DNA of 64,000 nt from Mytilus trossulus (GCF_036588685.1 NC_086385.1:45717216-45781215); one strand, 5' to 3'; positions 16,706-37,782 are shown, numbered from the stretch's first letter. Program-made: numbers and translations. The notes: generated from the sequence alone by a model not told the origin.

Positions 16706-16979
16706 GTCAGAGCTCTGACATAAACAAGTCAGAATAAACTGACTTCTATAAGTCAGATATAATTTGATGTAAGTGTTATCTCCCTTCTTGCACTTAACAG
16801 AATATGACTTGTACGGGTCAGTTTTTGTCAGACTTTAGTTTATCATAAAATGACTTAAGCAGGTCAGCTTTTGCACATTAAAATGTGACTTTATATCTCA
16901 ATATTTTAACAAGATTTATGCCCCTTTTAGATGCATTTTGACCTACAGAAGTCAATTTTGTTCTGACTTGAAGCAGTCA
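16706..16979. promoter_or_regulatory. Subterminal array of TGAC-N8-GTCA palindromes (putative transposase/accessory-protein binding sites) after a 14-bp terminal palindrome
   Basis: GTCAGAGCTCTGAC at 16706-16719; perfect TGAC-N8-GTCA at 16716, 16740, 16805, 16851, 16939, 16964. Confidence 0.75.
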
Positions 16980-17734: not shown

Positions 17735-19735
17735 AGTGAACAAAGAAAAATAAAACATTATTGGCAGTGAGTTATAAAGTCATATCAATAAGCACTTTTT
17801 TTAAAATGTTTCTGCACCCAACTTGGCAGTGTAATTTTACAGTACCTTATCTTGACACTATTACAAAATAAGGCAAAAGTAACTGAACCCTACTTGGCAG
17901 AGTTTGAGGTCATCTTATTTAGCACTGTGCCCATCTTGGCTTTCATCATAGATATTTTAAATCACAAAAGTTGCATATAAATTTGGTGACAGTCTTTTGG
18001 GGTATTGTACAACATGTTGAAGAGTGAACAAAGAAAAATAAAACATTATTGGCAGTGAGTTATAAAGTCATATCAATAAGCACTTTTTTAAAAATGTTTC
18101 TGCACCCAACTTGGCAGTGTAATTTTACAGTACCTTATCTTGACACTATTACAAAATAAGGCAAAAGTAACTGAACCTTACTTGGCAGAGTTTGAGGTCA
18201 TCTTATTTAGCACTGTACCCATCTTGGCTTTCATCATAGATATTTTTAAATCACAAAAGTTGCATATAAATTGGGTGACAGTCTTTTGGGGTATTGTACA
18301 ACATGTTGAAGAGTGAACAAAGAAAAATAAAACATTATTGGCAGTGAGTTATAAAGTCATATCAATAAGCACTTTTTTTAAAATGTTTCTGCACCCAACT
18401 TGGCAGTGTAATTTTACAGTACCTTATCTTGACACTATTACAAAATAAGGCAAAAGTAACTGAACCCTACTTGGCAGAGTTTGAGGTCATCTTATTTAGC
18501 ACTGTGCCCATCTTGGCTTTCATCATAGATATTTTAAATCACAAAAGTTGCATATAAATTTGGTGACAGTCTTTTGGGGTATTGTACAACATGTTGAAGA
18601 GTGAACAAAGAAAAATAAAACATTATTGGCAGTGAGTTATAAAGTCATATCAATAAGCACTTTTTTAAAAATGTTTCTGCACCCAACTTGGCAGTGTAAT
18701 TTTACAGTACCTTATCTTGACACTATTACAAAATAAGGCAAAAGTAACTGAACCCTACTTGGCAGAGTTTGAGGTCATCTTATTTAGCACTGTACCCATC
18801 TTGGCTTTCATCATAGATATTTTTAAATCACAAAAGTTGCATATAAATTGGGTGACAGTCTTTTGGGGTATTGTACAACATGTTGAAGAGTGAACAAAGA
18901 AAAATAAAACATTATTGGCAGTGAGTTATAAAGTCATATCAATAAGCACTTTTTTAAAAATGTTTCTGCACCCAACTTGGCAGTGTAATTTTACAGTACC
19001 TTATCTTGACACTATTACAAAATAAGGCAAAAGTAACTGAACCCTACTTGGCAGAGTTTGAGGTCATCTTATTTAGCACTGTACCCATCTTGGCTTTCAT
19101 CATAGATATTTTTAAATCACAAAAGTTGCATATAAATTGGGTGACAGTCTTTTGGGGTATTGTACAACATGTTGAAGAGTGAACAAAGAAAAATAAAACA
19201 TTATTGGCAGTGAGTTATAAAGTCATATCAATAAGCACTTTTTTAAAAATGTTTCTGCACCCAACTTGGCAGTGTAATTTTACAGTACCTTATCTTGACA
19301 CTATTACAAAATAAGGCAAAAGTAACTGAACCCTACTTGGCAGAGTTTGAGGTCATCTTATTTAGCACTGTACCCATCTTGGCTTTCATCATAGATATTT
19401 TTAAATCACAAAAGTTGCATATAAATTGGGTGACAGTCTTTTGGGGTATTGTACAACATGTTGAAGAGTGAACAAAGAAAAATAAAACATTATTGGCAGT
19501 GAGTTATAAAGTCATATCAATAAGCACTTTTTTAAAAATGTTTCTGCACCCAACTTGGCAGTGTAATTTTACAGTACCTTATCTTGACACTATTACAAAA
19601 TAAGGCAAAAGTAACTGAACCCTACTTGGCAGAGTTTGAGGTCATCTTATTTAGCACTGTACCCATCTTGGCTTTCATCATAGATATTTTTAAATCACAA
19701 AAGTTGCATATAAATTGGGTGAAAGTCTTTTGGGG
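17735..19735. repeat. Tandem satellite, 288/289-bp unit, ~6.9 copies
   Basis: Unit start agtgaacaaagaaaaataaaacattattggcag at 17735, 18023, 18312, 18600, 18889, 19178, 19467; units nearly identical. Confidence 0.98.
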
Positions 19736-19807
19736 GACTGAGGGACTGACAGACAGACAAATGTACAACGGTACACCATAATAGGTCCCCTTTTAAAAAA
19801 AACAAGC

Positions 19808-21122
19808 TTTTTCAAAAACAAAACTATAAAAAGCACCAATAAAGACTAGATCCAACTCTTTAAAACTTAACATATACATGATATATACAAAAACTAACAT
19901 ATTTACAAACAAAACAAAAACATTTAATTTGACTTGTCAAATATAGAAATGCATATTTGAAGGTGGAGGTATGGCAAGGTCATAAAAAAAAATATTCATT
20001 TCATTGTCATTACAACATAGAAAACACCTATGAAATTGACGAATAAAACCAAAACTACACATGTTTAGAACATGATAGTTTACCAAAACAACTTTACCAC
20101 AAAAATATCTATATTGTTATGGTTTTGGCTCTTAAATATCAAAGACACTATTTCTTAAGATCAACTAATTTTTTTTTTTAATAACCTCTATTTCAAAAAG
20201 TTTCAAGACGGACACCTTCCTATTCCTTCTTTACCAAACAAAAAACAAAAAAAGCATAATAACTTTGAAAAATACGAAAGATGCATTTTTTTTATTTTGA
20301 TAATTCCTGTTCCTTTTTTCAAATTAAAGAGTTAAAAAAGCCACATCATCATACCTTCTCCTTCCCAAAAACTAAACATAATATCAGAGTCAGAATACGA
20401 CATCTCATCACATTCAAAACACAAACTAAAACCAGAGGAGAAAAAAATTGATCATACATTTTTCAAAAACAAAACTATAAAAAGCACCAATAAAGACTAG
20501 ATCCAACTCTTTAAAACTTAACATATACATGATATATACAAAAAGTAACATATATACAAACAAAACAAAAACATTTAATTTGACTTGTCAAATATAGAAA
20601 TCCATATTTGAAGGTGGAGGTATGGCAAGGTCCTTCATTTATCAATGATATTACTTTTTCTATATACTTTATCTAGACACTATAAATTAAATAAAAATAT
20701 TCATTTCATTGTAATTATGACATAGAAAACACCTATGAAATTGACGAATAAAACCCAAACTACATATGTTTAGAACATAATATTTTACGAAAACAACTTT
20801 ACAACAAAATATCTACCGGTATATTGTTATGGTTTTGGCTCTTAAATATCAAAGACACTATTTCTTAAGATCAACTAATTTGGTTGTCTTTTTTTTTTAA
20901 TAAACTCTATTTCAAAAAGTTTCAAGACGGACACCTTCCTATTCTTTCTTAACCCAAAAAAAACAAGAAAGGGTATATAACTTTGAAAAATACGAAAGAT
21001 GTATTTTTTTTATTTTGATAATTCCTGTTCCTTTTTTCAAATTAAAGAGTTAAAAAAGCCACATCATCATACCTTCTCCTTCCCAAAAACTAAACATAAT
21101 ATCAGAGTCAGAATACGACATC
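19808..21122. repeat. Tandem duplication of ~650 bp
   Basis: ttttcaaaaacaaaactataaaaagcacc...gatcatacattttt at ~19808 and ~20460, with several indels. Confidence 0.92.
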
Positions 21123-21837
21123 TCATCACATTCAAAACACAAACTAAAACCAGAGGAGAAAAAAATTGATCATACATTTTTCTAAATATCAAAAGATAAA
21201 AAAAATCTTATGAAAATTTGGCACATATGCTAGCACCATGACAATACTTCACATCTTCCCAGGAAAAATAATGCACTCATTCAGACTAAGGCTATAATAA
21301 AAAAAAATCATTCTCATCCTGTTTTAGCCAAGTTTATAGTAAAACATTGGTTAGTTTTAATATCAATTTCATTTTCAGAATGAATCACACTTGGAAATTA
21401 ACAAAATAAAAAAAACAATAACTTTAAATGTCTCTTTAAAAATATAAGAAAAATAAAGGATTTTTTTCATTATAGCCTCAATTAATTCTAAGATTATAAA
21501 ATAAACATGATATATAAAGTAAGACATTTATAAAACATGTGAAAAGTAACTAGTAACCACTTTGTGATCAGTTCTGTAATTAAAACACTGTCAATTACTT
21601 CAATATGTTCAACTTGACCTAAAAATGACCTTGACCTTAAGGACAAACTTCCCAACCAAGAATCCACCCCACATAGAGCCTCAGGAAAAGTTGCACAACA
21701 TTCGATTACACTAGGTTTTGAAAAGAGATCTTAATTTCTTAATGTAATTTTGAATAAGTTATAATGAATAATTAATAAAATATTTGTCCAAATATAAAAT
21801 CATTTTTAATTTTCAGTCAGAATTATGAGTCACAAAT

Positions 21838-21979
21838 TGACCTCAACAAGTCTGTCATATTTTGACTTTGACAAGTCAGTATTGTACACATATTTTTTTC
21901 ATAATACACTATATGATGAGAAAATGTGTTTACAATATGGACTTGTCAGAGTCAGAATATGACCGACTTATTGAGGTCA
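21838..21979. promoter_or_regulatory. Internal cluster of TGAC-N8-GTCA-type palindromes
   Basis: Sites at 21838 (GTCT end), 21863 (perfect), 21939 (GGAC start), 21964 (CGAC start); two pairs each 25 bp apart. Confidence 0.6.
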
Positions 21980-22154
21980 ATTTGTGTTAAATAAAACTTG
22001 ATGAGGAAACTTAATTTTTCAGTTAATTATCACCTGAACTGTGACTGATAATCTTAAGTACATTTAAAAAAAAACATTTTCTTACTGGTATGTTTTATTC
22101 CGAGAGCCAGAAGGATGCAAATTTAAATGGAAATATTCAAATAAAAAATATAAG

Positions 22155-25100
22155 TTATTGAAAGTATTTTTTACAGTAATTTTCATATTTTTGAAGAACC
22201 TGTTCAAAATTGTTTATGCTCCAGACTCTTCCTGAAGAGTCTCGAGCATAAATGTCAATATCAGTTTCGAATATAAATTTTTGGTCAACTGTGTCTTGAT
22301 CTTCCTTTGAAGGCCACTTGAATGAATTTTTTGAGCTGGACTGCTCCATGCAGTTAACTTGACACATCAGACCGTCCTTTCCAATGATCTGTCCCAGAAA
22401 CATTTTGTCTGAATAAGCAACACCAACATATTGTCCAACCATATTTTTTTCACCATTATCTGAAAATTTAAAATGTAGTGTAAAGGAGTATGTTCGATAA
22501 GGTCCTAAAATGGCCCCCATTTTAAGGGTAAATTTCAAATTCTGATTTATCGACCAATATCATGATAAATTATAGCTAATACATTGACTAGCTAGGATAT
22601 AAACAATTTTGTTGAAAATTTTACGTTTCTGCGTTCATTATTACGTCACAAGTTTCATGTTTCTTATGTAGATGATGTGATTCTTGAGTTCCTAAATGAA
22701 AGTCTGGTGTCTTTTATATTTTCTTATAGTATTTTTTAAAAGAAAAGTATTTCATTGGCAGTTAAAATTTTGAAATCTTTTGTAATTTATTAATTTTACC
22801 TTCATTTTCTTCTGTCTTGTTTCCTTCTGTCTTTTTTTCTTCTACGCTAAAGGTCAAAAGACCTTCTGAATTATTCACCTGAAACAAAGGAAGAAGTTTA
22901 AAAAAATGAACACTGAAAAGCTATCATTTAATACACTTTCCAAAAAATAATTTTAACTTTGCTGGTCATGCTGGTAGGATAAATGAAAAATTTATATGAT
23001 TGTCATTCAACTTCAATGGACATTTGTCTCATTGGCAATGGCTCCAACATTACTTTTTCATATATTTAAAGAGGAAAAATATTCAATTTCATCTCCATTT
23101 TTATTAAATATTAAACAAAAGTTTCATAGGCCTTACCTGGAAAAGTAAAAGATCTTGTATCATTGGATCTGCCATCTCTTCTAAAAGTTGCTCTGTTTGA
23201 GAGACAGATAACAGGCTAAAAAAAATAAAAAATATATAATTGTTTAGTAGTTATCTCCTGCTTATTTCACATCTAGTATATGTAAACAAGTTTTCCATGA
23301 AATCTTGAGTCAAATTCGTAAAATATAACAAAACAAAATGTTGTCAAGAGACTCTTATTTGGCATTAAAATAAAAAGATCATATCATAGGGAACCATTGT
23401 ACTAAGTTTCAGGTAGACTGGACTTTAACTTAATTAAAAAACTACCTTGACCAAAAATTTAATCCAAAGCAGGATGGACGGACGGATGCACAGAAGCACA
23501 AACCAAAAGACATAATGCCCCTATCCAATTAAAAGTAGGGTATAAAAAAGGTTGTGATAGGACAGTTAATTGAAAAATGTACAATCTTCTTTAAAGGCAC
23601 AATTTTTTTTATGACTACGTTTGATTTCAATAATTTTGTATTTGCAGCCATATGGTAGGTATAAATAAAAATATCAATACTTGAGCACTAATCCAAAATA
23701 TATTTTGATTACAAACCTTTCCTTCTGGCTCTCTTCCTCACTGTCTTCTACACTGAAAAATTAAAATTTGCATAATTACTTTTTGAGGGGGCAGATGGTT
23801 TTTTTTTGTCCTTCTTGATCTTGGAATTTTGCTTACTGTGCTTTGTTATTTCATGGATTTATTGTCCATGAATTATGAAAAGTGCATTTACCCTGACACA
23901 TTTTTATTTCATTTTTATAATCGTCTCTTTGATTAAGGCTTTAAATTGTTGTTTTCCTGTGAACAGTGATGAATGTGTTAAAGTATCAGACTATATAAAC
24001 ATTCCTTACAATACTTTTAATATTAAGAACAATAAATAATTGGTAATTGCATTCTTGTTAAAAATTCAATCTGTCTCTCTCTTACCCATGGCATGTGAAG
24101 TTTATGTTATTTGCTAGAAACCAGTCAAAATTTCTGAAGGAGTATTTATTTATCATGGCAAAAATATAATGTCTTGCAAGACTTTTGTAGACGTGATAGA
24201 TTTTCTATTAATTCTTGGTTATTTTCAATTCAAAAGCATATACTTACATCTCCGAGGTATGAGAACAGGTTTTCTGCTTTTTTGTCACTGGCTCATCATC
24301 CTCATCACTCTGTTCATCAAACAAGTCAGACATCTTTTTTCTTTTCTGAGGGAGATTTGATGTTGTTTCTCTACCTCTACCTCTACCTCTAATGGCTGAT
24401 GACTTTCCTCTACCCTTTCCTTTACCTCTTACCCCTCCTCTGGCATGTCCGGTGATCTGATTACTAAAGAAAATTACCAAAATGATTGAAGGGTGTTAAT
24501 AGATAAGTGATTTTTACATTTTAACTTGTTAAACAAGTAGAAACCACAAATAAATGATGTTTCGATTAAAACAATAGTTTAAAATTACTGTAAATATAAA
24601 ATAGAAGATGTAGTGTGATTGTCCACAAAAGACCAAAATGACACAGACATAAACAACTGTAGATCACTGTAAGGCCTTCAACAATGAGCAAACCCTTTCT
24701 TTTTTTGAAGAAAAGTAATAAGAATAAATACGCTGCTGTAAATTGCCAGCAATTAAGTGTGCTGCTACATTTTTAAAACTCCTTGAAATTTATCTGTTAA
24801 AAGTTGTTTCATCGTTTGTATTGTATACCTTCTATCTTTTCTTGACTCGGCATACAGAGCCCTCTTTGCTGATCTTATATCAAAATTGCTGCTACTTGGG
24901 TCATAGCTGGTGCTTGGTCTGTTGGTGTTGCTTGATTCATCATGTTCATTGCTGGTACTTGGTCTGTTAGTGTTGCTGGGTTCATTGCTGGTACTTGGTC
25001 TGTTAGTGTTGCTGGGTTCACTGCTGGTGCCTGGTCTGTTGGTGTTACATGTGGATGTTGATGGTAGTCTGAAATAAGATGCACTGTTTATTAACAAAAG

Positions 25101-28100
25101 GGCATCACAATTTAAGTTTATAAAGGTCATTCGCATTTAGACTGGTCAAAATATAACTGTAAAAATACAAATAAAATGATACACATCCAGTGTGGAATTC
25201 TTAAATTGCTAACATGAGTATATTAATCATGTGTACATTGTTAATTAACAATTCAAACCATACCACAGCATTTTGCATAGATGTTAATGTAAAGCATTCA
25301 TTTCATATTAACGTTTAAAGTAACAATCATACTTTGGTGTTTTTTTGTTGTTTTGAACCTGGGGGTTTCACAATACCAGTTCCCATTCTTAATCTATTTA
25401 TATTAATAAAGTTAAATGTGGATATTACAACTTACACATTCACATCTGCTGGTGTCACATTAATCTCCATTTGCTCCAGCATTTCTTTCTGCTCCCTGGC
25501 CAAATTTCTCCCGCTGCCGACACCAAAGTTGAAAGGATCTTTCTCTGGTGTCAGCAGAATGACTTCTTGGTCCGGGGTCACCTCAGGCATAGTTGGCAGC
25601 TTCTTCCTATGGCTGTATGGTAGTTTGTCTGTAATGGGGAGGCCTTCCGAAAAACGTTTAATCATTTCCCCATATCCAAATGCTTTAATTACTTTACTCC
25701 CCTTCCTCCTAATGAGGAAGAGGGTATCAACGGGCTCATATACCTGTTCTCTTTCCAATTTGGTTGCAAATTTTTGTAAATTTTTGACAATTCTGCTTTT
25801 TGACTTTTGTAAGGCGTTAATTTTACAGTTTCTCTCCTGGTACTTGTTGTCATAATTTCTTTTCTCCCCTGGTTTTAGTTTCTCCTCTCTACTCTCTTCC
25901 TCCTCTCTACTCTCTATAACTGAAAAAAAAGTAAATATAAACAATTGAAATTACAAACTTACAAACATATACTGTAAAATCTAGGAATGAGGTTTAAGGA
26001 CTTACAATAATTTCAAAAAGAAAAAAAAACACATTTTTTTAATTCTGTTTGTTTATTTTATGTTATAGGTTAGTCATTTAAGGTGTTACCCAACACTGTC
26101 AGTAAAATTAAAATTTGACAAAGTATTTTCTTTGACCCTTTAACAAAAATTTCCAAATTTTGGTTATATTGCAGTTTGACAAACATCAATTTTGTTCATT
26201 TAAAAGCTTAATATTCCATTAAAACAACTTAATTAACGCATTTAGCTGACTTTACAGAGTTATCTCACTGTAGTGTTAGGTACCACCTTAAGGGATATGA
26301 CATGCACAGAGTAGAGTTAATTATATATTTGCATGCATTGGTGTTGATGAAAAATTGATTTTATGATTTTTGTTCATAAATTCAGATCAATTCAATCTTA
26401 TAATTCTGAGAGCTCAAATTGTATGCATACATGTACATGCTGTATGTATGTTAATAGTGGATGATTCAAATCAAATTCAAAGTCAGGTCTCTCCTCTCAA
26501 ACATATTAATTAATAGCAATATATTTAATCCTGAAGATCATAATAAATAAATTATAAATGTCTAGTAGAATAATTATTAACTTCATATCTCATTTCTCGT
26601 ATCTCATTTCTGTTTAACAGATGGTCTTATTTGTTCCATGAATTTCAATAGTTAAAAATATCCAGAATTCGATTTTACCTTGCTTTTATGGAAAATCTGC
26701 ATCTTCTTTCCATTATTATAATGGAAAGAAGGATCATCAGGCATATTAGTGCAATGCTGATTGCCACAAAACACATAAATTCCATGCTCATGCTTTCATC
26801 TATAATAAAACATTATAATAAATAATCTTAATAATTAGACATTGATGGCAATATATAAAATAAATTCATACAATGGTAAAATTTTAAAAGAATGTTTTTT
26901 TCACCACAAGTAAAATTTAAACCAGGCTTATAATTTATATTATGGCAGACGGGCACTATAAAAGACTCATCTGATAAAAGATACATGTAAATTCAATCAG
27001 TTACTGTATGTGACCTGATTAAACACCTCCTCCCTTATAAATCAACATTTCATTTTTATAGTTAAAGCTAGAAATAAAGAATCTTTGATTCATTTTACCA
27101 AACGTGTGCATATATTTTTTTCTGCCAAAAATTGTTTTAGTTTATTGTGAAATCTATAAAAAGACTCTGAAAGAACAAAAGTTAGAAAGTTAAAATTTAG
27201 CTTATACTCATAAAAAGGCTGAATTGAAAACTAGTAACACACAAACATAAAATAATGAACATCACATGCAATTGCATAACTTAACATGCTTAAGGGAACA
27301 TAACAATATATAATTTTCATTCTGACTTCCAAGGATTTTTTTTTTTAACTCAAACAAGTCAAATCTATCTATAAAGTATGACTTTATACCTTAACCCTTT
27401 CCTCGTGAATGATGCCTTTTGATGCCTTTGTAGTACCTCAGTTAAACCACTTTGACTATGAAATGTCTGCGTAAATTTTATATCCAATATGAAAAGGATA
27501 TTCATAAGAATATCTGACTTACATTTATTTGATGAAATTTTTGTTTTTCGCAATGCATTAATACTTTAAAGCATATTTTCAGTATCTTATTGAAAAATCC
27601 TAGGCAAATCAAGAATGCAAAAAGAAACGCATTGAGGAAAGGGTTAACATGCATAGATATTAATTTGTGTATATATATAACACATGTATCATGCACATAT
27701 ATACATAAGGTGTCAGCCCTGTATAACAAATGGTTATCAAATGTCACGCTGAAGCATCTGACAACTTTTTCACATGTTTAGATGTGTATAATGCATAAAG
27801 AGAATGCCTGTCATAAATTTTTAATGAGACCTTCCCTGAGATAACCATTGGTAATACAGGATTAATGCATATTATTCAGAACATACAATATATATAGTAT
27901 TTAATGGTACAAAACATGCTAAATTATAAATACTGGCAAACATGTATATAGATAAACTGACATACATGAGAATCATACATACATTTTGTAGATGAAAATG
28001 TATACATTTCTTGAGATATAACATGCATTAATAAAATCAAACATGCCTCCAAACATTTATCATTTTGTTTATCATTACTATATAATACAAGTATCCACAA

Positions 28101-31100
28101 ACAAGAGTCAGACATATTGAAAGCATAGAACCAAACATGCAATTTTTTCTAAATATACCTCTAAAAATGAAAATTAATCTCATTGTGTCTCATTGTCTTT
28201 ATTCAGATTTTCTAACACATCAGTAAGCTCCCTCAAGAAATGAACAAGTTTGGCCTTTCCCTTTGTTTTAACCTCCTTCTGATACAATTGTTTGTGGTAA
28301 TCAAATTGAAAAGGATCTTCAATCTTGTCCAAACATTTTTCAATCTCATACTGGAGTTGTTTGTTAGTCATGTTACTTGTGCTAAATAGCTTCTCTCGCT
28401 CTGACGGAGTAACTGGGACAGGATGACGGAAGTTGTAATGGTCTGTCTGAATTGGATGTCCTAAAAATTCTGTTTTCATAAGGTGAATTCTTTTTCGTAC
28501 TGATAGTTTTAAAAAATCCACTAGTCCTTCATCAAGAGCCATCCCTGAAATAGATACATGGTCACCTTTTTTCCCTAAGTAATCAGTTTTCCTGAGTAAG
28601 ATCCTATATGCAATTATACCATTTTCGATTCCCAGAGAACGACTGTTACCTTTATCAGATTTAATGTTAAAGGTTGACAAAGAATGGTCTTTGATGGTTT
28701 CTAGCAGCTTGTTATTACGGCAAACAGTTAACCAAATTTTGTCTGTAGGTACACCTTTGGGGATCCATGACTTCAACTGCTTGTTCTTTTCTTCTAAAAT
28801 GAAGTCGAAATCTTCACCCAGGGACTTATTTCCACTTGTTGTGATTGATGAATATTTGTCACTTAAACTTCTTACTTCTTCTGGCATCATAAGGTCTTGA
28901 ATGGTGTCAAAAATTTCTATAACTTGATATTTGGGATGTGATCTTCCATGAAACAGTTCTTTTGTCATGTATTTGGCACTCTTAAGGAGGTCAGAATTGT
29001 TTCTTCTTGTTGCCATTCTAAAATTTATTATACCTTGGGAAAATCTGCATACCTGGTCCATCATATATGTAAAATTTGAGTTTGATGGAACCCCATACTT
29101 CTCAGTGCTGTATTTCAGGAAACCTTTTGCAGTCGGGTGAACCTTTGACAACATACAGAGTCGAACAAATGGTAAAACCAACTCCTGTAATGTTCCCAGG
29201 TGAAAGATTAGTAGTAATCTCCATGTTTTGTGGTGATCTTTGCATGCCTTTGCAAATTGTTTGGCAGCATCAGACTCAAATCCCATTAGTTGACATAAGT
29301 GTTCCAAGGCAGGTGTCCAGTTTAATTCAAAGAAAGATTTCATAAGATTCATTTCATAGTGACCAGACCCTATCCTCAGATATAACCAATCAAATTCTAG
29401 CATGAATTTTCTCTCCATTTGGGGATGAAATTCCTTTGCATGACTATTATAAAGATCTGTTGACAAAAATGACTTTGCACACCCTTCAATGGCACAAACA
29501 ACAGCTTCCTCTTTCAATTTCTTTATGATAAGGTATGGTAACCCATCACAGCATACAAATGTCCAGTGGCGCTGGTTGCCACCATATCTGACAATGCCAT
29601 TTTCTTCCCCAATCTTTCTTAAAACTCTTGCAACAGTTATCATGCTGTTTGGGTTACAGAATACAGGATCACTAATAATAATTTCATGTCTTCCATCATG
29701 GTTAGACTTAACATGGTTGAATTGGGTGAACTCGCTATGCACCTCTGTGATCTCTGACTTATCGTCATTTTCATCTTCCTCAAAAATAATTAGGTAGCAG
29801 GTGTCTTGGTCTTTTACAAATGAGTCATTGGTACAATCTTTCTTTTTATTCTTGGCTGATTTCAATCCATCTTTTCTACTGCAACTTGTACAAATTAGTT
29901 TGCGCTTACCATTCAATGCTCCACAGTGTTCACATTTAATATAGTTTTCATCCTGCACATCCTTTTTAACCTGATCATCAATAAAATCTTCAAAATTTCT
30001 CTCAGTTTGCTTCTGCTCCTTCGACACAGTGTCAATGGCATGGTCAATAAAATAGTACAACTGTTCGTAATGATCTGTTTCCATTTTTGAATATCTTTCT
30101 GTGTCCTGATCAATCATTTCATTGATAAGAGATTGAAGTTTTGAAGTTTGTGTAGTATCATTCTCATTGACATTTTCAGCTATATCATCTTTTTCCATCT
30201 TGGGTAACTGTAACTTTTTTTCAGGTTTCAAGTCTGCTTTAGTTTGTAAACTTTCAGGAGATTGCAATTCCATAAAGGCTTTGTTAGTAATTATGGATAT
30301 TGCAATTTTGTTTTTTGGCTTTATTGACCATGTTTTTCCTATTACTTGTTCGTTGTCAAACACATTCATCAGATCACATGAAGGTAATTCTGCGGGGTGG
30401 CTACTTTGCTCCTTAACCCAATTAGTGACAGTCTTGTAATGACCTGCTGGATTGGTATTTCCAAGTAAATCCACAACTAACCTGCTCCCAGTTAATGTAT
30501 ATGCAGTTAGATTCAGCAAAAAAGAAAGAGGTGAAATTAAACTTCTATTGCATACACTGTAAGATTGTTCTACTGCTCTACAAATTGGCAAGATGTCACC
30601 CGGTCTTTCTTTCAGCTTATGGAGAGAGATGTCAAGGTTACCAAGTCCCATTATGTAACCTATTAAGGGTTCATATCTGTTGTGGATCCATTTTAAAACA
30701 TCAAAATTTGCCACGGCATGGGGGTCCTTGTAAACATTTGAAAAGTTACTTGAATCCTCAGATATAGGTTTATGCTGCTTTTCCCAATACAGTTGCATAA
30801 CAGAGATTCTTCTTTCAGAGATAAAATGTTCAAAAATTCATTAAAAAAAACCTGTTTTTGGTTATCTTCCATCTTTAACAATGCATCTTTCATGTATTCT
30901 ATCAAACTGTTTAACTGTGAATATTCAGTAGCTAAGGGTGTAGTACTTTTTTGACTTTGGTCGTCCTCAAAGTTACTTTTAAATTCAGTATTCATGGGTG
31001 GGTATGTACTCTGAGAAGCATCATCATCATCATTGGTCCTCTTTCTCTTTTTAGGCCTCCCCCGAACTTGATCAGTTTTAGAGCACACTTCACAACCTAT

Positions 31101-32146
31101 GGTATGAGGTGGGAAATAAACCTTTGGCTTGGTCAATTTCAGTTCATTGGAGTTTGACAAGCTCTCCCCTTTTGTTTCCCTATATCTATATAATAACCTT
31201 GAGTGCCTAAGGCAAACAAATGGAGGGTATGTTTCGTCATTTTCCTCTTTAACATCAATTCCGTATATGGCAATTATTTCGGAAGCGTAAAGAACTTTTT
31301 GGTACTTTTTCTTAGAATCTCTAATAAATTCATTACAAAGGCGACATACAGTTTGTAGCTTTGATATGTGTTCCCGGCAATCAGAGATTTCACTCATGAT
31401 GAAGTAAGTTGTAACATTTATGATCTTTTCGATTGTATCAAGAGGAGGATAAAAACAAAAGAAAGCAAGGTTTTAACCATCAGCTTTTCTCTGAAAATAA
31501 AGGCCATGAAACTTGTACATGTGTTCATTTGGTGTACAAATTATGTAGCTACAATATATAATCTCAAGGCATACTTGTTTGCTAGTTGGGTATAAGAAAA
31601 AAAAATTGAACCAGACAATATGCAATGAAGTACATCATAGAGATCAGCTCAATTGCTGAACATCAATGAATTCTACAATAATATATCCTTGAGTCTTGCC
31701 ATTAAAAATGATCAAAAATTAAATCCTTTAAAAAGATCATAGAGAACATGTTTACTAAGTTTGAAGTTTATTGGACTTCATAAAGACAACCTTGACCAAA
31801 ATTTAACCCAATACAGGAACAGATGAAAGAATGAACTAACTGAGAGGTGGGTGCATTGACTGCAAAACTTAATAAAAAGCTAATGCAATTAAAATACATA
31901 CATGACAGCTGATACATGATTCTTAATTACAATCTTAAATGTCATAAGACAAATCAATTAACCAGAACAAGTCCTAATTTTTTTACTTAGTCAAAAGTTA
32001 GAATAAATAATTTGACTTGATCTTTCAAAATTCTTTAAATACTATTGATGATCAGTGATTGAGAACAATAACCATATATCACTATAAACTGAAAAATGAA
32101 CTTTTCACTTACCATGTTGATCGTCACTACTGCTGTTTCCAGACAT
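22155..32146 (-). CDS. 8-exon accessory gene, 490 aa: basic N-terminal region, Ser/Thr/Asn repeat, RG-rich tract, acidic linker, C-terminal Tudor/SH3-like barrel
   Basis: Exons 32146-32113, 25919-25436, 25068-24829, 24463-24248, 23752-23717, 23215-23137, 22878-22800, 22459-22155. All introns GT-AG; phases 1,2,2,2,2,0,1 all match; 1473 nt with no internal stop (MSGNSSSDDQHVIESREEE...YENYCKKYFQ). AATAAA at 22094-22099 (minus strand). The short first exon is the least certain. Confidence 0.82.
24900..25048 (-). repeat. Coding minisatellite, 36-bp unit (NTNRPSTSNEPS) x~4
   Basis: Repeated peptide in ORF 24765-25136, within exon 3 of the accessory gene. Confidence 0.85.
28180..30798 (-). CDS. Putative DDE transposase core (Academ/DUF6589-like), 872-aa ORF
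   Basis: Intronless ORF. Motif order VFDNEQ ... VCCDGLPY ... IGSGHYEMN ... GEDFDFILEEKNK, plus a CxxC-x11-CxxC ribbon and a C2H2-like finger (CAIEGC...H...H). Family recalled from motif pattern, not searched. Confidence 0.7.
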   Translation of the reverse strand: MQLYWEKQHKPISEDSSNFSNVYKDPHAVANFDVLKWIHNRYEPLIGYIMGLGNLDISLHKLKERPGDILPICRAVEQSYSVCNRSLISPLSFLLNLTAYTLTGSRLVVDLLGNTNPAGHYKTVTNWVKEQSSHPAELPSCDLMNVFDNEQVIGKTWSIKPKNKIAISIITNKAFMELQSPESLQTKADLKPEKKLQLPKMEKDDIAENVNENDTTQTSKLQSLINEMIDQDTERYSKMETDHYEQLYYFIDHAIDTVSKEQKQTERNFEDFIDDQVKKDVQDENYIKCEHCGALNGKRKLICTSCSRKDGLKSAKNKKKDCTNDSFVKDQDTCYLIIFEEDENDDKSEITEVHSEFTQFNHVKSNHDGRHEIIISDPVFCNPNSMITVARVLRKIGEENGIVRYGGNQRHWTFVCCDGLPYLIIKKLKEEAVVCAIEGCAKSFLSTDLYNSHAKEFHPQMERKFMLEFDWLYLRIGSGHYEMNLMKSFFELNWTPALEHLCQLMGFESDAAKQFAKACKDHHKTWRLLLIFHLGTLQELVLPFVRLCMLSKVHPTAKGFLKYSTEKYGVPSNSNFTYMMDQVCRFSQGIINFRMATRRNNSDLLKSAKYMTKELFHGRSHPKYQVIEIFDTIQDLMMPEEVRSLSDKYSSITTSGNKSLGEDFDFILEEKNKQLKSWIPKGVPTDKIWLTVCRNNKLLETIKDHSLSTFNIKSDKGNSRSLGIENGIIAYRILLRKTDYLGKKGDHVSISGMALDEGLVDFLKLSVRKRIHLMKTEFLGHPIQTDHYNFRHPVPVTPSEREKLFSTSNMTNKQLQYEIEKCLDKIEDPFQFDYHKQLYQKEVKTKGKAKLVHFLRELTDVLENLNKDNETQ
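30693..31397 (-). CDS. N-terminal part of the same transposase: RAG1 N-terminal/Chapaev-like Zn-binding domain plus AT-hook/NLS
   Basis: H-x7-CRLC...YGIDV...YPPFVCLRH...FPPHTIGCEVC...RGRPKKRKR parallels RAG1 CRIC...FRIDV...HPTEFCHNC...WHPHTPSCDIC. Overlaps the 872-aa ORF; one added A in the run at 30779-30782 fuses them. Confidence 0.75.
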   Translation of the reverse strand: MSEISDCREHISKLQTVCRLCNEFIRDSKKKYQKVLYASEIIAIYGIDVKEENDETYPPFVCLRHSRLLYRYRETKGESLSNSNELKLTKPKVYFPPHTIGCEVCSKTDQVRGRPKKRKRTNDDDDASQSTYPPMNTEFKSNFEDDQSQKSTTPLATEYSQLNSLIEYMKDALLKMEDNQKQVFFNEFLNILSLKEESLLCNCIGKSSINLYLRIQVTFQMFTRTPMPWQILMF

Positions 32147-32504
32147 GTTTGATTTTTCTGAGAAAAAAAATGAGAGAAATTGTAACATATAAATAAATAA
32201 CCATTCGACTTAAAATTATTTATAAAAAAAATGTTAAATATAAAAAAACAATGGCAGATTCAGAAAAAAAGGGGGGTCTTAGTGGAAGATTTAGATCTGT
32301 ATTTCTTGACTTTTCTTTTCTTCTAAGTACACATAAATATTATGGTTTAAAAAAAATATTTTAGCAACCATTTGACCCAATTTTTTCTCAATACATTTGT
32401 TTGTACTTCTAAAATGATCAACTACAAAATGTAGCAGTGGCAGATTCTGAAAGGGGCTTCCAAAGAAGAAAAATAGATTTTATTTGAAACTTTGTTCTGC
32501 AAAC

Positions 32505-32546
32505 TGACTTAAACAAGTCAAATCATGTTCTGACTTTACAAAGTCA
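32505..32546. promoter_or_regulatory. Pair of TGAC-N8-GTCA palindromes near the right breakpoint, upstream of both genes
   Basis: TGACttaaacaaGTCA at 32505 and TGACtttacaaaGTCA at 32531. Confidence 0.65.
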
Positions 32547-32687
32547 GTAATTAACTAAATTTATTGAGATGGTCAGGCATTGTAAAATGATATTAATGAA
32601 TGTATTGAAAAGGTTATTTTAAGACACCGGAAATACATGTAAGATCCTGTAAAAATAAATAACCATTTGACTTTAAATTATTTATAA

Positions 32688-35600
32688 AAAATCTGATAAA
32701 ATAGTCATTTCCATCAAAAGTGTTTAATCAAAGAGAGGTAACTCAAGTTTATTTTGTTTGCCCACATGTAACTCGATTCAAGCCCTTTCCGTGTCCGATT
32801 TTCTCCCACACGCTCTAACATGTGGGCTAACCCGAATAATTCAGTCGTTATAAGATAAGATATGATAACTTTATTATCACTAACACATTGACAATAAATG
32901 GTTATGGCAACACATTAAAGACTAAATACAATAACATATATACAATGAAGGAGTGACAGTGGATAATTATGAGAGATATATTTAAAAAAAAAAATGAGAA
33001 GCATATACATTATTACAGAAATCAAGTACCTTTTAATAATGAGTTTCTCACCAACAAGCATTCATTCAAATAGTTGACAACAATTTTTAATATTGTTTGG
33101 GAATTATTATTTAGAATTGATATAAGCAAGTTATATGACAAATGTATGATAAGGAAGGAAATTTGCTGTTCAATAGAACATTATATTTAATTTTTTAATA
33201 AGGTTATCTCTCACATATTTATAGGAGGAACATTTTAAAAGAAAGTGAAGTTCATCTTCAATGTCTCCATTGTTGCAGCAAAGACATACCCTACTCTGCT
33301 TTGGTATTTTTAGATATCGCCCTCTTTCAATAGATAAAGTATGAGCGCTTTTAACCTCAATTTACATAATGTTGATCTATCACTTTTGGATTTGCATTGA
33401 TCAACATACGATGGTTTTTTATTTTGTTTATAAAGTATATTAAAAAAAATCATTTTTTTATTTTGATTGATGTCAGTTTCTTGCTTTTGGAAGGCTATAT
33501 CATTGATTCTTTCTTGAATGGGTTTTAAATACACCTTAATATCAATAGGATTTAGATTAATAAAATGAAATCCAAGTCTTGAAATGAGATTTTTCATATT
33601 TATTATCCAAGAGTTATTTTTTTCAGTTGCTTTATAAATTTTTAGGGCTAGTGAATTATTTGATTCAAGTATATGAAGCCAATATTTTATTGCTGAAAAT
33701 TCTATTTTGGTATACATAGGCAATCTATTTAGCTCGGCTAAACATGCAGCATTTGATGCTTTACAATGTATTCCTAGAATTTCTTTAATGAATTTATACT
33801 GCAAGTGTTCAAAGGGATCTGAATCCCTGTGCTGTTTGCCTATTCCCCATACTTCACTACCGTATAGAGCAATAGGCACAACTAGGTAGTCAAATAATTT
33901 TTCTAATAGCTTGCATTGGTTATTAAGTCCAATTGGTTTTTTTATTTTAAAAAGTGCTTTTCTACCCTTTTCAACAAGCAATGAGCTGCACAGATTTAGA
34001 TTTCCTGTGTGCTGCCAGTGTCATGCCAAGGTAGCAGTATGATTTGACAGTTTCCAGGAATTCGTTATTATATTTAAAAAAAATATTATGGGTTTTTCCA
34101 TTTGAGTTAATATAATGACTTTTGATTTGTTTATGTTGACTTCTAGTTTCCAGCATTTAAAAAAATCACTAAGAACATTTAAAGCTGTTTGTAGTCCCTT
34201 TTCAGAATTTGATAATAAAACTATATCATCTGCAAATAAAAGGGAATTTATTGTTGTATCTCCAATTACAATGGGATCTGTATTAGCATCTTGGAGACTT
34301 TTTACCAAATTATTTATGTAAAGATTAAATAATAAAGGACTAAGAACATCTCTCTGTTTAACGCCACGGTTGGAGATAAATTCTTCACTGAGACCATTTT
34401 GGAATTTAATTCTACATGTAGTATCGTCATACATAGAATGAATTATATTAAAAAGTTTACAGGGTAATTTAAGTTCTAAAAGGATATAAAATAATCCATT
34501 TCTCCAAACTGTGTCAAAGGCCTTTCTGAGATCAACAAAGGCAGCAAGCACCTTCTGTTTCTTACTTTTCTTTTGTTCTATAATAGATTTCAAGGTGAAT
34601 ATTTGATCTGAGGTACGGGATTTTTCTTTAAATCCAATTTGGTTTTCACTAATAATGTTGTTGTTCATTCATGAATTTTGTAATTCTAATATATATAATT
34701 TTATTTAATAATTTTCCAAGATTGGAGGTTATAGAAATACCTCTGTAATTTGAAGGGTCTAGCTTATTGCCCTTTTTGTGTATTAATGAAATGAAACTTT
34801 CATTCCATATCTTGGGAAATGTTCCTTCTTTGAAGATTAGGTTAAATAATTTAGTTAAAGGGTCAACTAGTACAGGTAAACCATATTTAATCATTTCATT
34901 TGAAATCAAGTCCTTTGCACTGGATTTGCCATTTTTTAAGGTTTTAGAGACTTTGATTATTTCATCTGATGTTATTGGTTGGTTATAGGACATATTTATA
35001 TTATTGTTTTTTAGTGCAGTTATTAGCTCATCTAATTTTTTAAGGATAGTTTGGTGAAATTTATTGTCCTTTGGTTGAGCTTCACAAGAATTTAAATTTT
35101 TGAAGAAGTTATAGAATGTTTGCTCGTCTAGTTTTTCAGTAGTATTATTTTCTGATGCTCGTTTCAATTTATTAAGTAAGTCCCAGAAGGATTTTGGGTC
35201 ATTTTTGATATTATTGGACAGATCTGAACATATTTTATTCTTGTATAATTTTTCTTCTTGTTTACATTTTCGCCTCAATTTTGAGCGATAAGAGTAGTAT
35301 TCTTTTCTGTAAGCTCCATTAAATGGAAATTTATTAATAAGAAAGGCATAGTGCTTAACAGTTTTATATAAGTCATCACATGAACCTGAAAACCAGGGTT
35401 TTCTTTTTGGTTTATTTGTTTGCTTTTTAAGGCGCCCTTTGATAAATTTGACCGAAGCCAAAGCTGTTTCTTTAAGAATTGTGTTAAAGTCATTAACAGC
35501 CTCATTACAATTTAAGTATTTTCTACTGAGAAATTTTCTGAGTTTGGTACTAGTATTTTTATCCTGTATAAGGGTAGAGTAACGATTTATAGCTTCTGAA

Positions 35601-37782
35601 TCCCATACAAATTTACCTGGGAGTGGTTTTAAATATGCTTGTTGGGTTTTAGTATTGTCATAAAAAGATGTTAACAAGCTACAGCTTATTGCACAATGAT
35701 CTGATAATGTTGTAAAGTCGTGCACAGTAAAACTATTTATGGCATAAACATGTAATAAATTTGCAGATGCAACTGCATAGTCAACAACACTAGAACCATT
35801 ATATTTTATACAAGTATATTTACCAAGAAGATCGCCAATTGTTCTACCATTCAAAATTCGTAGCCCATCTTCTTTACAGAGCTCTATTAATAATTTGCAA
35901 CTCTTTTTTGGCCTTTTATGATCAAGACTATTTCTTGGTGTACCTATATCATATACATAGCTATCATCCTCAGCATGAGGATAGATAGATTCATCAGAGT
36001 ATACAAAGTCTGGTGTTGTGCTAGTGTAGGCATTAAAATCGCCTTGAATCAATACTTCACCATATTGACTATAGTTTTCTATATTACAGAGTAATTTTGA
36101 ATACATTTCTTCAATATCTTTTGGTTGCCCAGAAGAATTTTCTGGGGAAAAATAGATAAAAGCAAGATATATATCTTTTGGAAGATTAAAAAACTTATGG
36201 TTTAGCTTTACCCACTGGATATCACTATGTTCATTTGGAAGCTTAGTCAAACCTTTGATCAAAGAAAGTTTGGCATATATTGCAATTCCACCAGAATTAC
36301 GCCTTGCTTTTTATGTTTAGATCGACTACTGTTGCAAATAAGTGCATAATCTGGTATATTCAAAGTAGTTCCACTGTCACTCCATGTTTCAATTAAATTA
36401 AATAGATGCATATTAGATATAATATTCAAAAAAGCAGGGTCCTTAATTTTGTCTTGATTTAAGCCCTGGATATTCCATAAACCAATTTTCAGGTTATTCG
36501 TGGTCATTGTTAAAGAATCAATGATGGTAAGATGACGGGAAGTTTTGTAATAAATTGGATTTCTTAAGGCATGATTGCATGTGTTTAGATGTTGGTTTGG
36601 TTATATGTAAAGGATCTAAATGAAGATATTAAATACCTTAATGAATGTCCTATGGTATAGGTACCTTTTAATAATAGTATAAGAAAAAAAAAAAAAAAAA
36701 AAAAAAGTTAACAATTTACTTTAAAGGTGCATTAAGAAGTCAATTATTGACTTTTTTGGTGTAAAGAGGGATAACTCTAATTCATAAGTAAGCTTGAATA
36801 AAAAGATTGATAAAAAGATTGATAAAAAGATACATAAAAATAAAATGAAGATATAATAACTGTTGATGATGCACAGGTAATGACTAGAATCAATGTACAC
36901 AGGATATATGTAAATGATATCAAGATACATAATGGTACCTATATAATGTTATATTGATATGAAACACAATTCATATTTTCAATGTAAAATGAATAACAAC
37001 CAAAAAATAATAATAAACAAAGTAAAAAAAAACCAAACCAATATACAAAAAAAATAAAATAATACAGTACTGACAGTTAACAATGAGAATCAGAATGGTT
37101 CATTAATAAAGAAAATATTTATTAGAAGTCCATTCTCTGCCTAGCTGATGGCATGTTCCAAGGTCCAAAAAGCCAAGGGTTGAAGTATGGCATGTTCAAG
37201 TTGAAGGGTGGACAAGGTGGATTTCCTAACGGTTGTTGGTATTGATTATTGTTATAATTTGGGTTTTCAATTGGTGGTTGTTATTGACTATTTCCGAGCG
37301 ATTGTTGGTATTGACTATTGTTATAATTTGGGTTTTCCTTTGGTGGTTTGTATTGACTTTTTCCAAGCGATTGTTGGTATTGACTATTGTTATAATTTGG
37401 GTTTTCAATTGGTGGTTGGTATTGACCATTGTTATTGTATGGATTCCTCAGTAGTGGTTGGCCTGTATTATTGTTATAGTATGGATTTCTGTGCGGCGGT
37501 GAGTATTGATTGTTGTTATTAATGTCAGCCTTGTTTTGTCTGTAGTTCTTTGTTTCGCCGTGATACACACTAGGTTTGTTACTAGTCCTTGGTGGTGTGT
37601 TAGCTTGCGTGAATGGGATCTTCATCTGGCGCTTCAAAAATTTCACAATTGCAGGTATACCTCTGCTGTCATTGAGGTGTACATAGTCGAAGAACATATC
37701 GTCTGTGGGTATAAAACCTTTGAGTATGTTGAAAGATGGATAGTCATGAGCTACGGATATTATCCTGTCGTTTGCTTCATCA
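32688..37782 (+). repeat. 5.1-kb direct repeat, copy 2
   Basis: Near-identical to 11610-16705; continues uninterrupted into the rest of LINE ORF1. Confidence 0.97.
33040..36507 (-). pseudogene. LINE ORF2 (endonuclease + reverse transcriptase), frameshifted, copy 2
   Basis: Same fragment pattern as copy 1 (36259-36507, 34649-36262, 34021-34668, 33971-34156, 33310-33981). Confidence 0.9.

What the first reader, a model, noticed from the sequence alone, without database searches (positions are those of the whole stretch)
22155..32146. Hidden intact 8-exon gene whose 6.2-kb first coding intron contains the whole transposase gene on the same strand
Seen: eight exons join with canonical splice sites and matching phases into a 490-aa stop-free frame; the ORF track shows only fragments. 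The product has an RG-rich tract (RGGVRGKGKGRG...RGRGRGR), NLS-like PQKRKK and a C-terminal VGQYVGVAY...FLGQI...FKWPSKED barrel resembling Tudor/SH3 modules. Inference: one promoter near 32.2-32.6 kb yields both proteins by alternative splicing or polyadenylation. The accessory protein may bind the palindromes or read chromatin for targeting.
Basis: partly seen in the sequence, partly recalled or inferred. Interest (0 to 1): 0.8.

Follow-up and report, generated by a model that had tools for sequence, protein, structure and literature searches.

The report
Transposon accessory gene co-transcribed with transposase
The "hidden" 8-exon gene is real: it is the second, accessory gene of a 16-kb mussel DNA transposon whose transposase carries a RAG1-like zinc finger, and both genes are transcribed from one start as in maize En/Spm, but RefSeq already annotates it and the accessory-only splice was not seen in the reads I could lay.

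Summary
The 8-exon, 490-aa frame is confirmed. It is not hidden. Models for the sister copy and for M. galloprovincialis join exons 2-8 exactly as proposed.

The gene lies in a ~16-kb DNA transposon (16704-32687, minus strand). Its family has CA..TG termini and 5-bp target duplications. The transposase has a RAG1-NZD/Chapa zinc finger, so the element is Chapaev-like.

RNA contigs show exon 1 is real, but there it splices to 31490, just upstream of the transposase ATG. That transcript runs through the whole transposase ORF. It then splices 28159>26799 into a 121-nt exon, and 26679>25919 into exon 2. So both ORFs lie on one long mRNA, and in it exon 1's ATG makes only a 14-codon uORF.

The direct 32113>25919 splice appears only in the RefSeq model. 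I did not see it in reads.

Homologues of the exon-2 domain follow the transposase in about 22 diverged copies. Exon 2 folds as helix-hairpin-helix (weakly MADS/NRF1-like). Exon 8 folds as a Tudor/SH3-like barrel.

This is an En/Spm tnpA/tnpD-like layout in an animal Chapaev-type element: a new variant of a known kind. Other notes from this scan cover the same stretch.

The parts
16704..32687 (-). Transposon copy (about 15,984 bp). The left terminal inverted repeat is present and the right one is missing. The genes are on the minus strand.
   Evidence: The left end CAGTCAGAGCTCTGACATAAAC... is shared with many ~7-kb relatives that have ~43-60-bp TIRs and 5-bp TSDs. No right TIR is found in the window. 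The insert is bounded by 5.1-kb direct repeats.
16704..16760 (+). Left terminal inverted repeat with GTCAG/CTGAC palindromes and AAGTCAG motifs
32113..32214 (-). Exon 1 (at least 102 nt in an RNA contig). The ATG at 32146 has A at -3. The donor is G|GTAAGT at 32113/32112.
   Evidence: The X2 contig has 102 loose nt, and the 30 letters shown equal window 32114-32143 exactly.
28159..31490 (-). Transposase exon of the long mRNA. The ORF runs from the ATG at 31397 to the stop at 28180-28182. The window copy has a 1-nt deletion at 30778.
   Evidence: X2 contig piece 28159-31491; an extra T behind 30778 in the X1 and X2 contigs; T5 in the C1 copy; Pfam RAG1_imp_bd E 1.3e-7; profile hit to the RAG1 NZD structure 21WB E 1.2e-8
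26679..26799 (-). 121-nt exon seen in RNA contigs between the transposase exon and exon 2. It has stops in the frame that would feed exon 2.
   Evidence: GT..AG joints 28159>26799 (X2) and 26679>25919 (X1 and X2); translation
25436..25919 (-). Exon 2: the conserved N-terminal accessory domain (long basic helix, hairpin, helix). It has no ATG before the domain, and the acceptor is in phase 1.
24829..25068 (-). Exon 3: Ser/Thr/Pro/Asn-rich 12-aa repeats. The sister copy has one more repeat.
24248..24463 (-). Exon 4: RG-rich tract, PQKRKK and an acidic stretch
23717..23752 (-). Exon 5
23137..23215 (-). Exon 6
22953..22970 (-). Coding part of an alternative last exon (HDQQS*) used by RefSeq model XP_063411498.1 in place of exons 7-8
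22800..22878 (-). Exon 7
22155..22459 (-). Exon 8: Tudor/SH3-like beta-barrel plus C-terminal helix, then the stop. An AATAAA lies about 45 nt downstream.
32417..32700 (.). Subterminal repeat region with an AAGTCAG/CTGACTT cluster (32504-32547). It is similar to internal repeats of the non-autonomous 7-kb relatives, and the putative promoter lies in or below it.
11610..16705 (+). Left copy of the 5.1-kb direct repeat that flanks the element. It is mostly a LINE-like element.
   Evidence: 99.88% identical to 32688-37782
32688..37782 (+). Right copy of the same 5.1-kb direct repeat

Best explanation
The eight exons are the accessory (second) gene of a ~16-kb Chapaev-like DNA transposon in Mytilus trossulus. 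The element belongs to the CACTA/Mirage/Chapaev/Transib group. One promoter upstream of 32214 drives a single transcription unit on the minus strand.

Shown: a long mRNA runs exon 1 > 31490-28159 (the whole transposase ORF) > 121-nt exon > exon 2 and onward. In this mRNA the first AUG, in exon 1, opens only a 14-codon uORF. Two more uORFs precede the transposase AUG. The accessory exons trail as untranslatable 3' sequence.

Inferred (RefSeq model, frame logic, comparison with relatives): when exon 1 is instead spliced to 25919, the same AUG opens the accessory protein. That protein is 490 aa with exons 7-8, or 368 aa with the alternative last exon. The splice choice at exon 1 would therefore decide which of the two products is made, as in maize En/Spm tnpA/tnpD.

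Inferred function: the conserved exon-2 domain (basic helix, hairpin, helix) is a dimeric DNA-binding module that recognises the GTCAG/CTGAC palindromes near the element's ends. The RG/NLS region takes the protein to the nucleus. The C-terminal Tudor-like barrel reads a methylated partner or chromatin. The protein would then help the transposase to assemble on the element's ends or to choose targets.
For: Frame and splice sites.

RNA: an X2 contig of 4119 nt links exon 1 (30 loose letters = window 32114-32143) to 31491-28159, to 26799-26679 and to 25919 onward. All joints are GT..AG. X1 shows the 25919/26679 joint independently.

Public models: P0040 (XP_063411498.1, M. trossulus) begins MSGNSSSDDQH|VIESREEE. 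It carries the window-specific F in exon 6 and the short exon 3. P0005 and P0041 join exons 2-8.

Linkage: exon-2 homologues (28-54% identity, open frames of 169-196 aa) lie 0.6-2.5 kb downstream of the transposase, on the same strand, in about 22 diverged copies. One 37%-identity family also has an exon-8-like exon further downstream.

Need for an upstream coding exon: the window, C75 and C5 lineages all lack an ATG in exon 2 and keep a phase-1 acceptor. Other lineages have an ATG just after the acceptor. The 121-nt exon has stops in the required frame.

Folds.

Transposon identity.

Precedent: Spm is a single transcription unit, and its tnpD mRNA has two tandem ORFs (PMC1636069).
Against: I found no read or contig that shows the 32113>25919 junction. 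The stretch I could lay ended at 31699, the raw RNA runs had almost no depth there, and 47 loose ends were not listed.

Depth of exon 2 equals depth of the transposase exon in both RNA-like runs, so a short isoform is at most minor there. In maize, by contrast, tnpA dominates.

I could not see the evidence behind the RefSeq model, which may be partly ab initio.

The window copy lacks a right TIR, and the C1 copy lacks both ends. This subfamily may therefore be immobile, and its accessory protein may have no current role.

The two copies differ by only ~0.1% everywhere, so they give no dN/dS signal.

The structural matches are weak: Z 5.7 for exon 2 and Z 7.3 for exon 8, both within the range that common small folds can reach.
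Confidence: 0.55

Rival explanations
1. The accessory exons of this subfamily are no longer translated. They are carried only as the 3' part of the transposase mRNA, and the exon1>exon2 join in RefSeq is an artefact of gene prediction. The open 490-aa frame persists only because the copies are very young.
For: Only the long isoform is seen. Exon 2 has no ATG of its own. The two copies are ~99.9% identical, so the open frames could be unselected. Both copies lack complete ends.
Against: Three lineages only 53-54% identical in exon 2 keep the open frame, the phase-1 acceptor and the donor. That requires translation entering from an upstream exon. Exon 1 carries an ATG in a good context and in exactly the right phase. 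The M. galloprovincialis protein is 100% identical over 394 aa. Distant homologues keep the same N-domain / RG / barrel order (P0033).
Confidence: 0.2
2. There are two tandem genes. The accessory gene has its own promoter between the transposase stop and exon 2 (about 26.8-28.1 kb). Translation starts at the internal Met of exon 2 (as in XP_063439514.1) or in an upstream exon at 27.9-28.1 kb (as in VDI36920.1). The long contig would then be read-through.
For: The X1 contig with the 25919/26679 joint runs on unspliced to 27051 and ends there. Public models P0005, P0041 and P0039 start in that way. The C1 sister copy lacks exon 1 yet still has a RefSeq model.
Against: The X2 contig joins the 121-nt exon to a donor 21 nt after the transposase stop and carries on to exon 1. 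The 121-nt exon gives no in-frame start. A start at Met 85 would remove the best-conserved half of the exon-2 domain (the basic helix). X1 depth is continuous from 27853 to 31567.
Confidence: 0.17
3. The gene is a host gene into whose first intron a transposase gene happened to insert. The two are unrelated.
For: The geometry alone. RefSeq names it as an ordinary LOC gene.
Against: The exon-2 domain follows the transposase at the same distance and on the same strand in about 22 copies, down to 37% transposase identity. Both lie inside one element whose left TIR is shared with a mobile family. They are co-transcribed.
Confidence: 0.03

Closest known systems
Maize En/Spm (CACTA) tnpA / tnpD
   Same: One transcription unit covers most of the element. 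The transposase ORF lies in what is the first intron of the accessory-protein mRNA. The long transcript carries two tandem ORFs, transposase first (PMC1636069, citing Masson 1989 and 1991). The accessory protein is proposed to bind repeated subterminal motifs. The element belongs to the same broad CMC/CMCT group.
   Different: No Transposase_21 domain. The termini are CAGTCAG, not CACTA, and the TSD is 5 bp, not 3 bp. The accessory protein is unrelated to TnpA in sequence. In the two runs examined the long isoform, not the short one, is what is seen. Here exon 1 supplies the accessory protein's start codon and serves as a uORF in the long form.
Chapaev / Chapaev3 transposons and N-RAG-TP of Aplysia
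   Same: The transposase has an N-terminal Chapa (RAG1 NZD-like) zinc finger, which is said to be confined to Chapaev among transposons (PMC4411706; bioRxiv 10.64898/2026.01.24.700457). The host is a mollusc. The ends are CA..TG.
   Different: I found no description of a second, spliced accessory gene or of a Tudor-like partner for these elements. This rests on a limited literature search. I could not align the transposase core to Repbase Chapaev sequences.
SmTRC1, a CACTA element of Schistosoma mansoni
   Same: It is an animal element of the same broad group with multiple alternatively spliced transcripts. One of those transcripts has two tandem ORFs (PMC1636069).
   Different: SmTRC1 has a Transposase_21 domain and no Chapa finger. 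Its small products are not reported as conserved elsewhere, whereas the exon-2 domain here is conserved across bivalve copies.
ProtoRAG / RAG1L-RAG2L transposon
   Same: 5-bp TSD. The transposase has an NZD-type zinc finger. It is a two-gene element whose partner carries a possible chromatin-reading module (PHD in RAG2; Tudor-like here).
   Different: The catalytic core shows no detectable similarity to RAG1 or Transib: only the NZD part matches. The partner is not a kelch propeller. The genes are co-linear and co-transcribed rather than separate.

Membership tests
Chapaev-like transposon (CMC/CMCT group) | Chapa / RAG1-NZD-like zinc finger at the transposase N-terminus | tested here: met
   Pfam RAG1_imp_bd is above its gathering score in the window ORF (32 bits, E 1.3e-7) and in relatives. 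A profile of four family members hits the RAG1 NZD structure 21WB at E 1.2e-8.
Chapaev-like transposon (CMC/CMCT group) | [quoted passage not shown] | tested here: inconclusive
   Invariant in alignment A3 (33-45% identity): D330, D600, C617-x4-C622, H635-x4-H640, E664, in the expected order. The Cys spacing is 4 rather than 2, and no reference Chapaev core was available to align. One relative gives a sub-threshold DUF6589 match (24.2 bits, below the 27-bit cut-off).
Chapaev-like transposon (CMC/CMCT group) | 5'-CA..TG-3' termini and 2-5-bp target site duplication | tested here: met
   Six of six complete ~7-kb relatives with the same TIR have 5-bp TSDs, and the ends are CAGTCAG..CTGACTG. The window copy has the left end only.
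En/Spm-type expression (works-like, not membership) | Single transcription unit with a long mRNA carrying the transposase ORF followed by the accessory exons | tested here: met
   X2 contig: exon 1 > transposase exon > 121-nt exon > exon 2
En/Spm-type expression (works-like, not membership) | Short alternatively spliced mRNA that skips the transposase ORF and encodes the accessory protein | tested here: inconclusive
   The junction is present in RefSeq XP_063411498.1. It was not seen in the one read-laying run allowed. Exon 2 and the transposase exon have equal depth.
CACTA (En/Spm) superfamily proper | Transposase_21 / Transposase_24 domains, CACTA termini and 3-bp TSD | tested here: not met
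   No such Pfam hit at E<=1 in five family members. The termini are CAGTCAG and the TSD is 5 bp.
Tudor / Royal-family domain (exon 8) | SH3-like five-stranded beta-barrel | tested here: met
   AF2 model with pLDDT 89. PHF1 Tudor: TM 0.68-0.71, rmsd 1.8-2.4 over ~60 columns, but E only 0.16-0.3. VIA: Z 7.3 to the PHF19 Tudor (26% identity, 53 aligned), tied with BAH, chromo-barrel and KOW domains.
Tudor / Royal-family domain (exon 8) | Sequence-profile membership and an aromatic cage | tested here: inconclusive
   No Pfam hit. Conserved aromatic positions (AY, WY/MF, FxWP; W48 invariant) are seen in alignment A1, but their geometry was not examined.
MADS / NRF1-like DNA-binding domain (exon 2) | Long basic helix followed by a beta-hairpin and a helix, forming a DNA-binding dimer | tested here: inconclusive
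   The model has helix 25-57, strands 65-70 and 77-82, and helix 84-91, with pLDDT above 90 in that part. The top five VIA rows are NRF1 (Z 5.7), MEF2A, SRF, MEF2D and SEP3 (Z 4.2-4.8), followed by unrelated rows at Z 4.0 or below. Foldseek E is 2-9. There is no sequence match.
RAG1/RAG2-type (ProtoRAG, Transib) | Transib/RAG1-like catalytic core and a RAG2-like partner | tested here: not met
   The profile search of PDB matches RAG1 only at the NZD (residues 138-234) and not at the core. The accessory protein has no kelch or PHD hit.

The most novel reading that the evidence does not exclude
A Chapaev-type transposon bearing a RAG1-NZD finger uses the splice choice at its first exon as a switch. 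One AUG either opens a conserved bivalve-wide accessory protein (DNA-binding-like N-domain, RG tract, Tudor-like reader) or becomes a short uORF that throttles the transposase. On this reading the accessory protein is an obligatory end-binding or chromatin-targeting partner. That would be a functional counterpart of TnpA, and loosely of RAG2, which arose independently in an animal lineage related to the source of the RAG1 N-terminus.
Probability: 0.3. Interest if true: 0.65.

Novelty: new variant of a known kind. Interest (0 to 1): 0.5.

Why it matters
Two-protein DNA transposons with a division of labour between a catalytic subunit and a DNA- or chromatin-reading subunit are rare and well studied in only a few cases, such as En/Spm and RAG1/RAG2. 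[quoted passage not shown] It has a transcribed copy, a family of short non-autonomous partners with clean 5-bp duplications, and an accessory protein family with no Pfam entry that is found across bivalves. If the splice switch and the partnership hold, the element offers a tractable system for asking how an accessory reader is recruited to a CMC/Transib-type transposase. It also shows that mussel 'LOC' genes of this family are transposon genes, which matters for annotation.

Tried and rejected
- **Joined protein:** Exons were searched one at a time. The public RefSeq model P0005 was used once, with a region restriction, and found only itself.
- **Sequence searches:** Pfam, PDB sequence search and the word-based protein search gave no named family for exons 2-8.
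- **Read laying:** I chose 25700-31699. The two raw RNA runs had almost no depth there.
- **Transposase look-up:** Exact look-ups of four transposase ORFs found nothing.
- **dN/dS:** The test between the two close copies is uninformative: 1/1439, 4/3136 and 5/4728 substitutions in accessory exons, transposase and non-coding DNA.
- **Right TIR:** A search for the right TIR in the window found none.
only one distant relative gives a sub-threshold DUF6589 match, plus language-model look-alikes at 0.84-0.86. This is a lead, not a classification.
- **Rfam:** A scan of 26000-27700 found nothing significant.


Full report
**1. What the window is.**
The window is G000:C13:45717216-45781215 of a 1.3-Gb, AT-rich assembly. 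A public protein identical to the sister copy's product (XP_063439514.1, Mytilus trossulus) sits on a contig of 113,486,924 bp, which is exactly the length of C1 here. So the genome is the M. trossulus RefSeq assembly.

**2. The observation.**
The exons are 32146-32113, 25919-25436, 25068-24829, 24463-24248, 23752-23717, 23215-23137, 22878-22800 and 22459-22155. Every exon has an AG acceptor after a pyrimidine tract and a GT donor. The phases fit, and the sum is 1473 nt = 490 codons without a stop. The 6193-nt intron between exons 1 and 2 holds the transposase frame, 28180-31397, on the same strand. Each exon was searched alone.

**3. The gene is real but not hidden.**
A full HMMER search with the exon-2 peptide, followed by a cluster look-up, returned four public models.
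- XP_063411498.1 (M. trossulus, 368 aa, contig of 63.2 Mb) begins MSGNSSSDDQH|VIESREEE. It continues through exons 3-6 and ends in an alternative last exon (HDQQS*, acceptor at 22970). It carries the window-specific Phe in exon 6 and the window's shorter exon 3, so it is the model for this locus.
- VDI36921.1 (M. galloprovincialis) does the same. It is 100% identical to the C1 product over 394 aa.
- VDI36920.1 starts in a predicted upstream exon at 27.9-28.1 kb.

**4. RNA evidence (one call allowed, at most 6,000 letters).**
I laid window 25700-31699 against two Logan contig sets that behave as RNA (X1, X2) and two raw RNA runs (X23, X24). The raw runs had almost no depth here.

A 4119-nt X2 contig in the sense orientation reads as follows:
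- 102 nt that do not lie on the stretch. The 30 letters shown equal window 32114-32143, which is exon 1.
- Then 31491-28159 without interruption.
- Then a GT..AG skip to 26799-26679.
- Then a GT..AG skip to 25919 and onward. It runs 342 nt past the stretch, which is the remaining 264 nt of exon 2 plus 78 nt.

X1 shows the 26679/25919 joint independently, but continues unspliced to 27051. X1 also has co-linear contigs over 27853-31567.

From this I conclude:
- Exon 1 and its donor at 32113 are real.
- The acceptor at 25919 is real.
- Transposase and accessory exons share one transcription unit.
- In these contigs, however, exon 1 is joined to an acceptor at 31490, 93 nt upstream of the transposase ATG.

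That 121-nt exon has stops in the frame that feeds exon 2, and no ATG after the last stop. The long mRNA therefore cannot make the accessory protein. Reading the sequence directly, exon 1's ATG in the long mRNA gives MSGNSSSDDQHEKS*. Two further short uORFs precede the transposase ATG. The direct 32113>25919 junction was not seen. The contig depth of exon 2 equals that of the transposase exon (13.2 vs 12.5; 14.9 vs 14.9), so a short isoform is at most minor in these samples.

**5. The transposase and the element.**
- The window splits the transposase into 234 + 872 aa because one T of a T5 run is missing at 30778. The C1 copy and both RNA contig sets have T5 and a single frame.
- The N-terminus matches Pfam RAG1_imp_bd (E 1.3e-7). 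A four-member profile hits the RAG1 NZD structure 21WB (E 1.2e-8) and nothing in the RAG1 core.
- According to PMC4411706 and bioRxiv 10.64898/2026.01.24.700457, this Chapa/NZD finger is a hallmark of Chapaev transposases.
- Invariant D330, D600, C617-x4-C622, H635-x4-H640 and E664 resemble the CMC/CMCT signature described in PMC12730594.
- The left end at 16704 (CAGTCAGAGCTCTGAC...) is shared at ~90% with many ~7-kb non-coding elements that have ~43-60-bp TIRs. Six of six such elements have 5-bp target duplications.
- No right TIR exists in the window.
- The region 32417-32700 resembles internal repeats of the 7-kb relatives and holds an AAGTCAG/CTGACTT cluster that mirrors the left end.
- The stretch 31333-32687, which contains exon 1, is unique in the genome.
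- The only close relative (C1, 99.6-99.8% identical over window 16717-31332) lacks 13 nt of the left TIR and everything upstream of 31332.

**6. The accessory module belongs to the transposon.**
Exon-2 homologues (28-54% identity, open frames of 169-196 aa) lie 0.6-2.5 kb downstream of the transposase, on the same strand, in about 22 copies. The transposases of these copies are only 37-66% identical to this one.

In the C14/C1 and C8 lineages this exon has its own ATG just after an acceptor. In the window, C75 and C5 lineages there is no ATG, and the acceptor phase (1) and the donor are conserved. This is what one expects if translation enters from a short upstream coding exon.

A C8 element also has an exon-8-like exon further downstream. 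A distant M. edulis protein (P0033) keeps the order N-domain, RG tract, acidic repeats, barrel.

Family members come from five Mytilus species and from Mercenaria. In Mercenaria the domain is fused to C2H2 fingers.

**7. Domains.**
- Exon 8 (alignment A1, AF2 pLDDT 89) is a small beta-barrel plus a helix. Foldseek ranks PHF1, SMN and PHF20 Tudor domains among its best (TM ~0.7 on the target, E 0.16-0.3). VIA gives Z 7.3 to the PHF19 Tudor, tied with BAH, chromo-barrel and KOW domains. The fold class is SH3-like/Royal, but finer membership is open.
- The same domain ends a 1203-aa single ORF on C9 that has no Pfam family.
- Exon 2 (A2, pLDDT above 90 for residues 20-100) is a 33-residue basic helix, a hairpin and a helix. 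The five best VIA rows are all dimeric DNA-binding domains: NRF1 at Z 5.7, then MEF2A, SRF, MEF2D and SEP3 at Z 4.2-4.8. Later rows are unrelated and score Z 4.0 or below. Foldseek is not significant. This is a lead for DNA binding, not a classification.

**8. How it most likely works.**
Shown: one promoter, one first exon, and a long mRNA with two tandem ORFs.

Inferred: the splice choice at exon 1 (to 31490 or to 25919) decides whether the first AUG opens a uORF ahead of the transposase or opens the accessory protein. The uORFs, and a stop codon followed by many exon junctions, should keep transposase output low. The accessory protein would bind the GTCAG/CTGAC palindromes through the exon-2 domain. 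It would read a methyl mark or a partner through the barrel.

This is the logic of maize En/Spm, in which a single transcription unit is alternatively spliced and the tnpD mRNA carries two tandem ORFs (PMC1636069). That paper also reports a similar pattern for the animal CACTA element SmTRC1.

**9. Verdict.**
The arrangement is an En/Spm-like two-product unit in a Chapaev-like element of bivalves, with a previously uncharacterised accessory protein family. The gene itself is already in RefSeq as an uncharacterized LOC. Other first-stage notes of this scan cover the same stretch.

Not done:
- The junction test across the 6.2-kb intron, because of the length limit.

Noticed in passing
window 11610-16705 and 32688-37782: A 5,096-bp direct repeat (99.88% identical) flanks the transposon exactly. 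It consists of 160 bp of unique DNA plus a ~4.9-kb LINE-like element that has other copies in the genome. The element's left TIR abuts the end of the left copy. A truncated right end with no TIR abuts the start of the right copy, and the right copy is followed by an 'empty site'. The cause could be aberrant or alternative transposition, unequal exchange or an assembly artefact; I did not resolve this.
   Followed up: partly
window 30778: The window has T4 where the C1 copy and the RNA contigs of two runs have T5. This 1-nt loss splits the transposase ORF. Because the RNA contigs also carry the locus-specific exon 1, other individuals have an intact frame at this locus. The difference is either a polymorphism or a homopolymer error in the assembly.
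   Followed up: partly
G000:C1:28181778-28195553 (L013+L015): The sister copy is 99.6-99.8% identical over 14.6 kb but lacks the first 13 nt of the left TIR and everything upstream of window-equivalent 31332. Its missing parts include exon 1 and the first Cys pair of the zinc finger. It looks like a segmental duplicate rather than a transposition product, yet RefSeq models a 406-aa accessory protein there.
   Followed up: partly
window 17735-19735 and 19808-21202: Inside the element, downstream of the accessory gene, lies a 289-bp tandem array of about 7 units. Next to it is a ~650-bp duplication containing two inverted 30-nt copies of the start of exon 2 (20423-20452 and 21141-21170 against 25852-25881). 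A 66-nt palindrome lies at 21831-21986.
   Followed up: no
window 26241-26292: A ~50-nt stretch inside the intron has enormous depth in all four runs (word depth 43,000 in X1), with loose ends on both sides. It is a fragment of a very abundant repeat or RNA. No Rfam family matched.
   Followed up: partly
L059:1065-4676 (G000:C9:75742464-75746075, minus strand): An intact 1203-aa single ORF with no Pfam family ends in the same Tudor-like C-terminal domain as exon 8 (39% identity in alignment A1). A similar 1234-aa frame lies on C75. It may be the protein of another mobile element that shares this module.
   Followed up: partly
P0025 (XP_053374115.1, Mercenaria mercenaria): A 1303-aa clam protein starts with the exon-2-type domain and an RG tract, then carries many C2H2 zinc fingers. 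It is a possible domesticated or fused derivative of the accessory protein.
   Followed up: no
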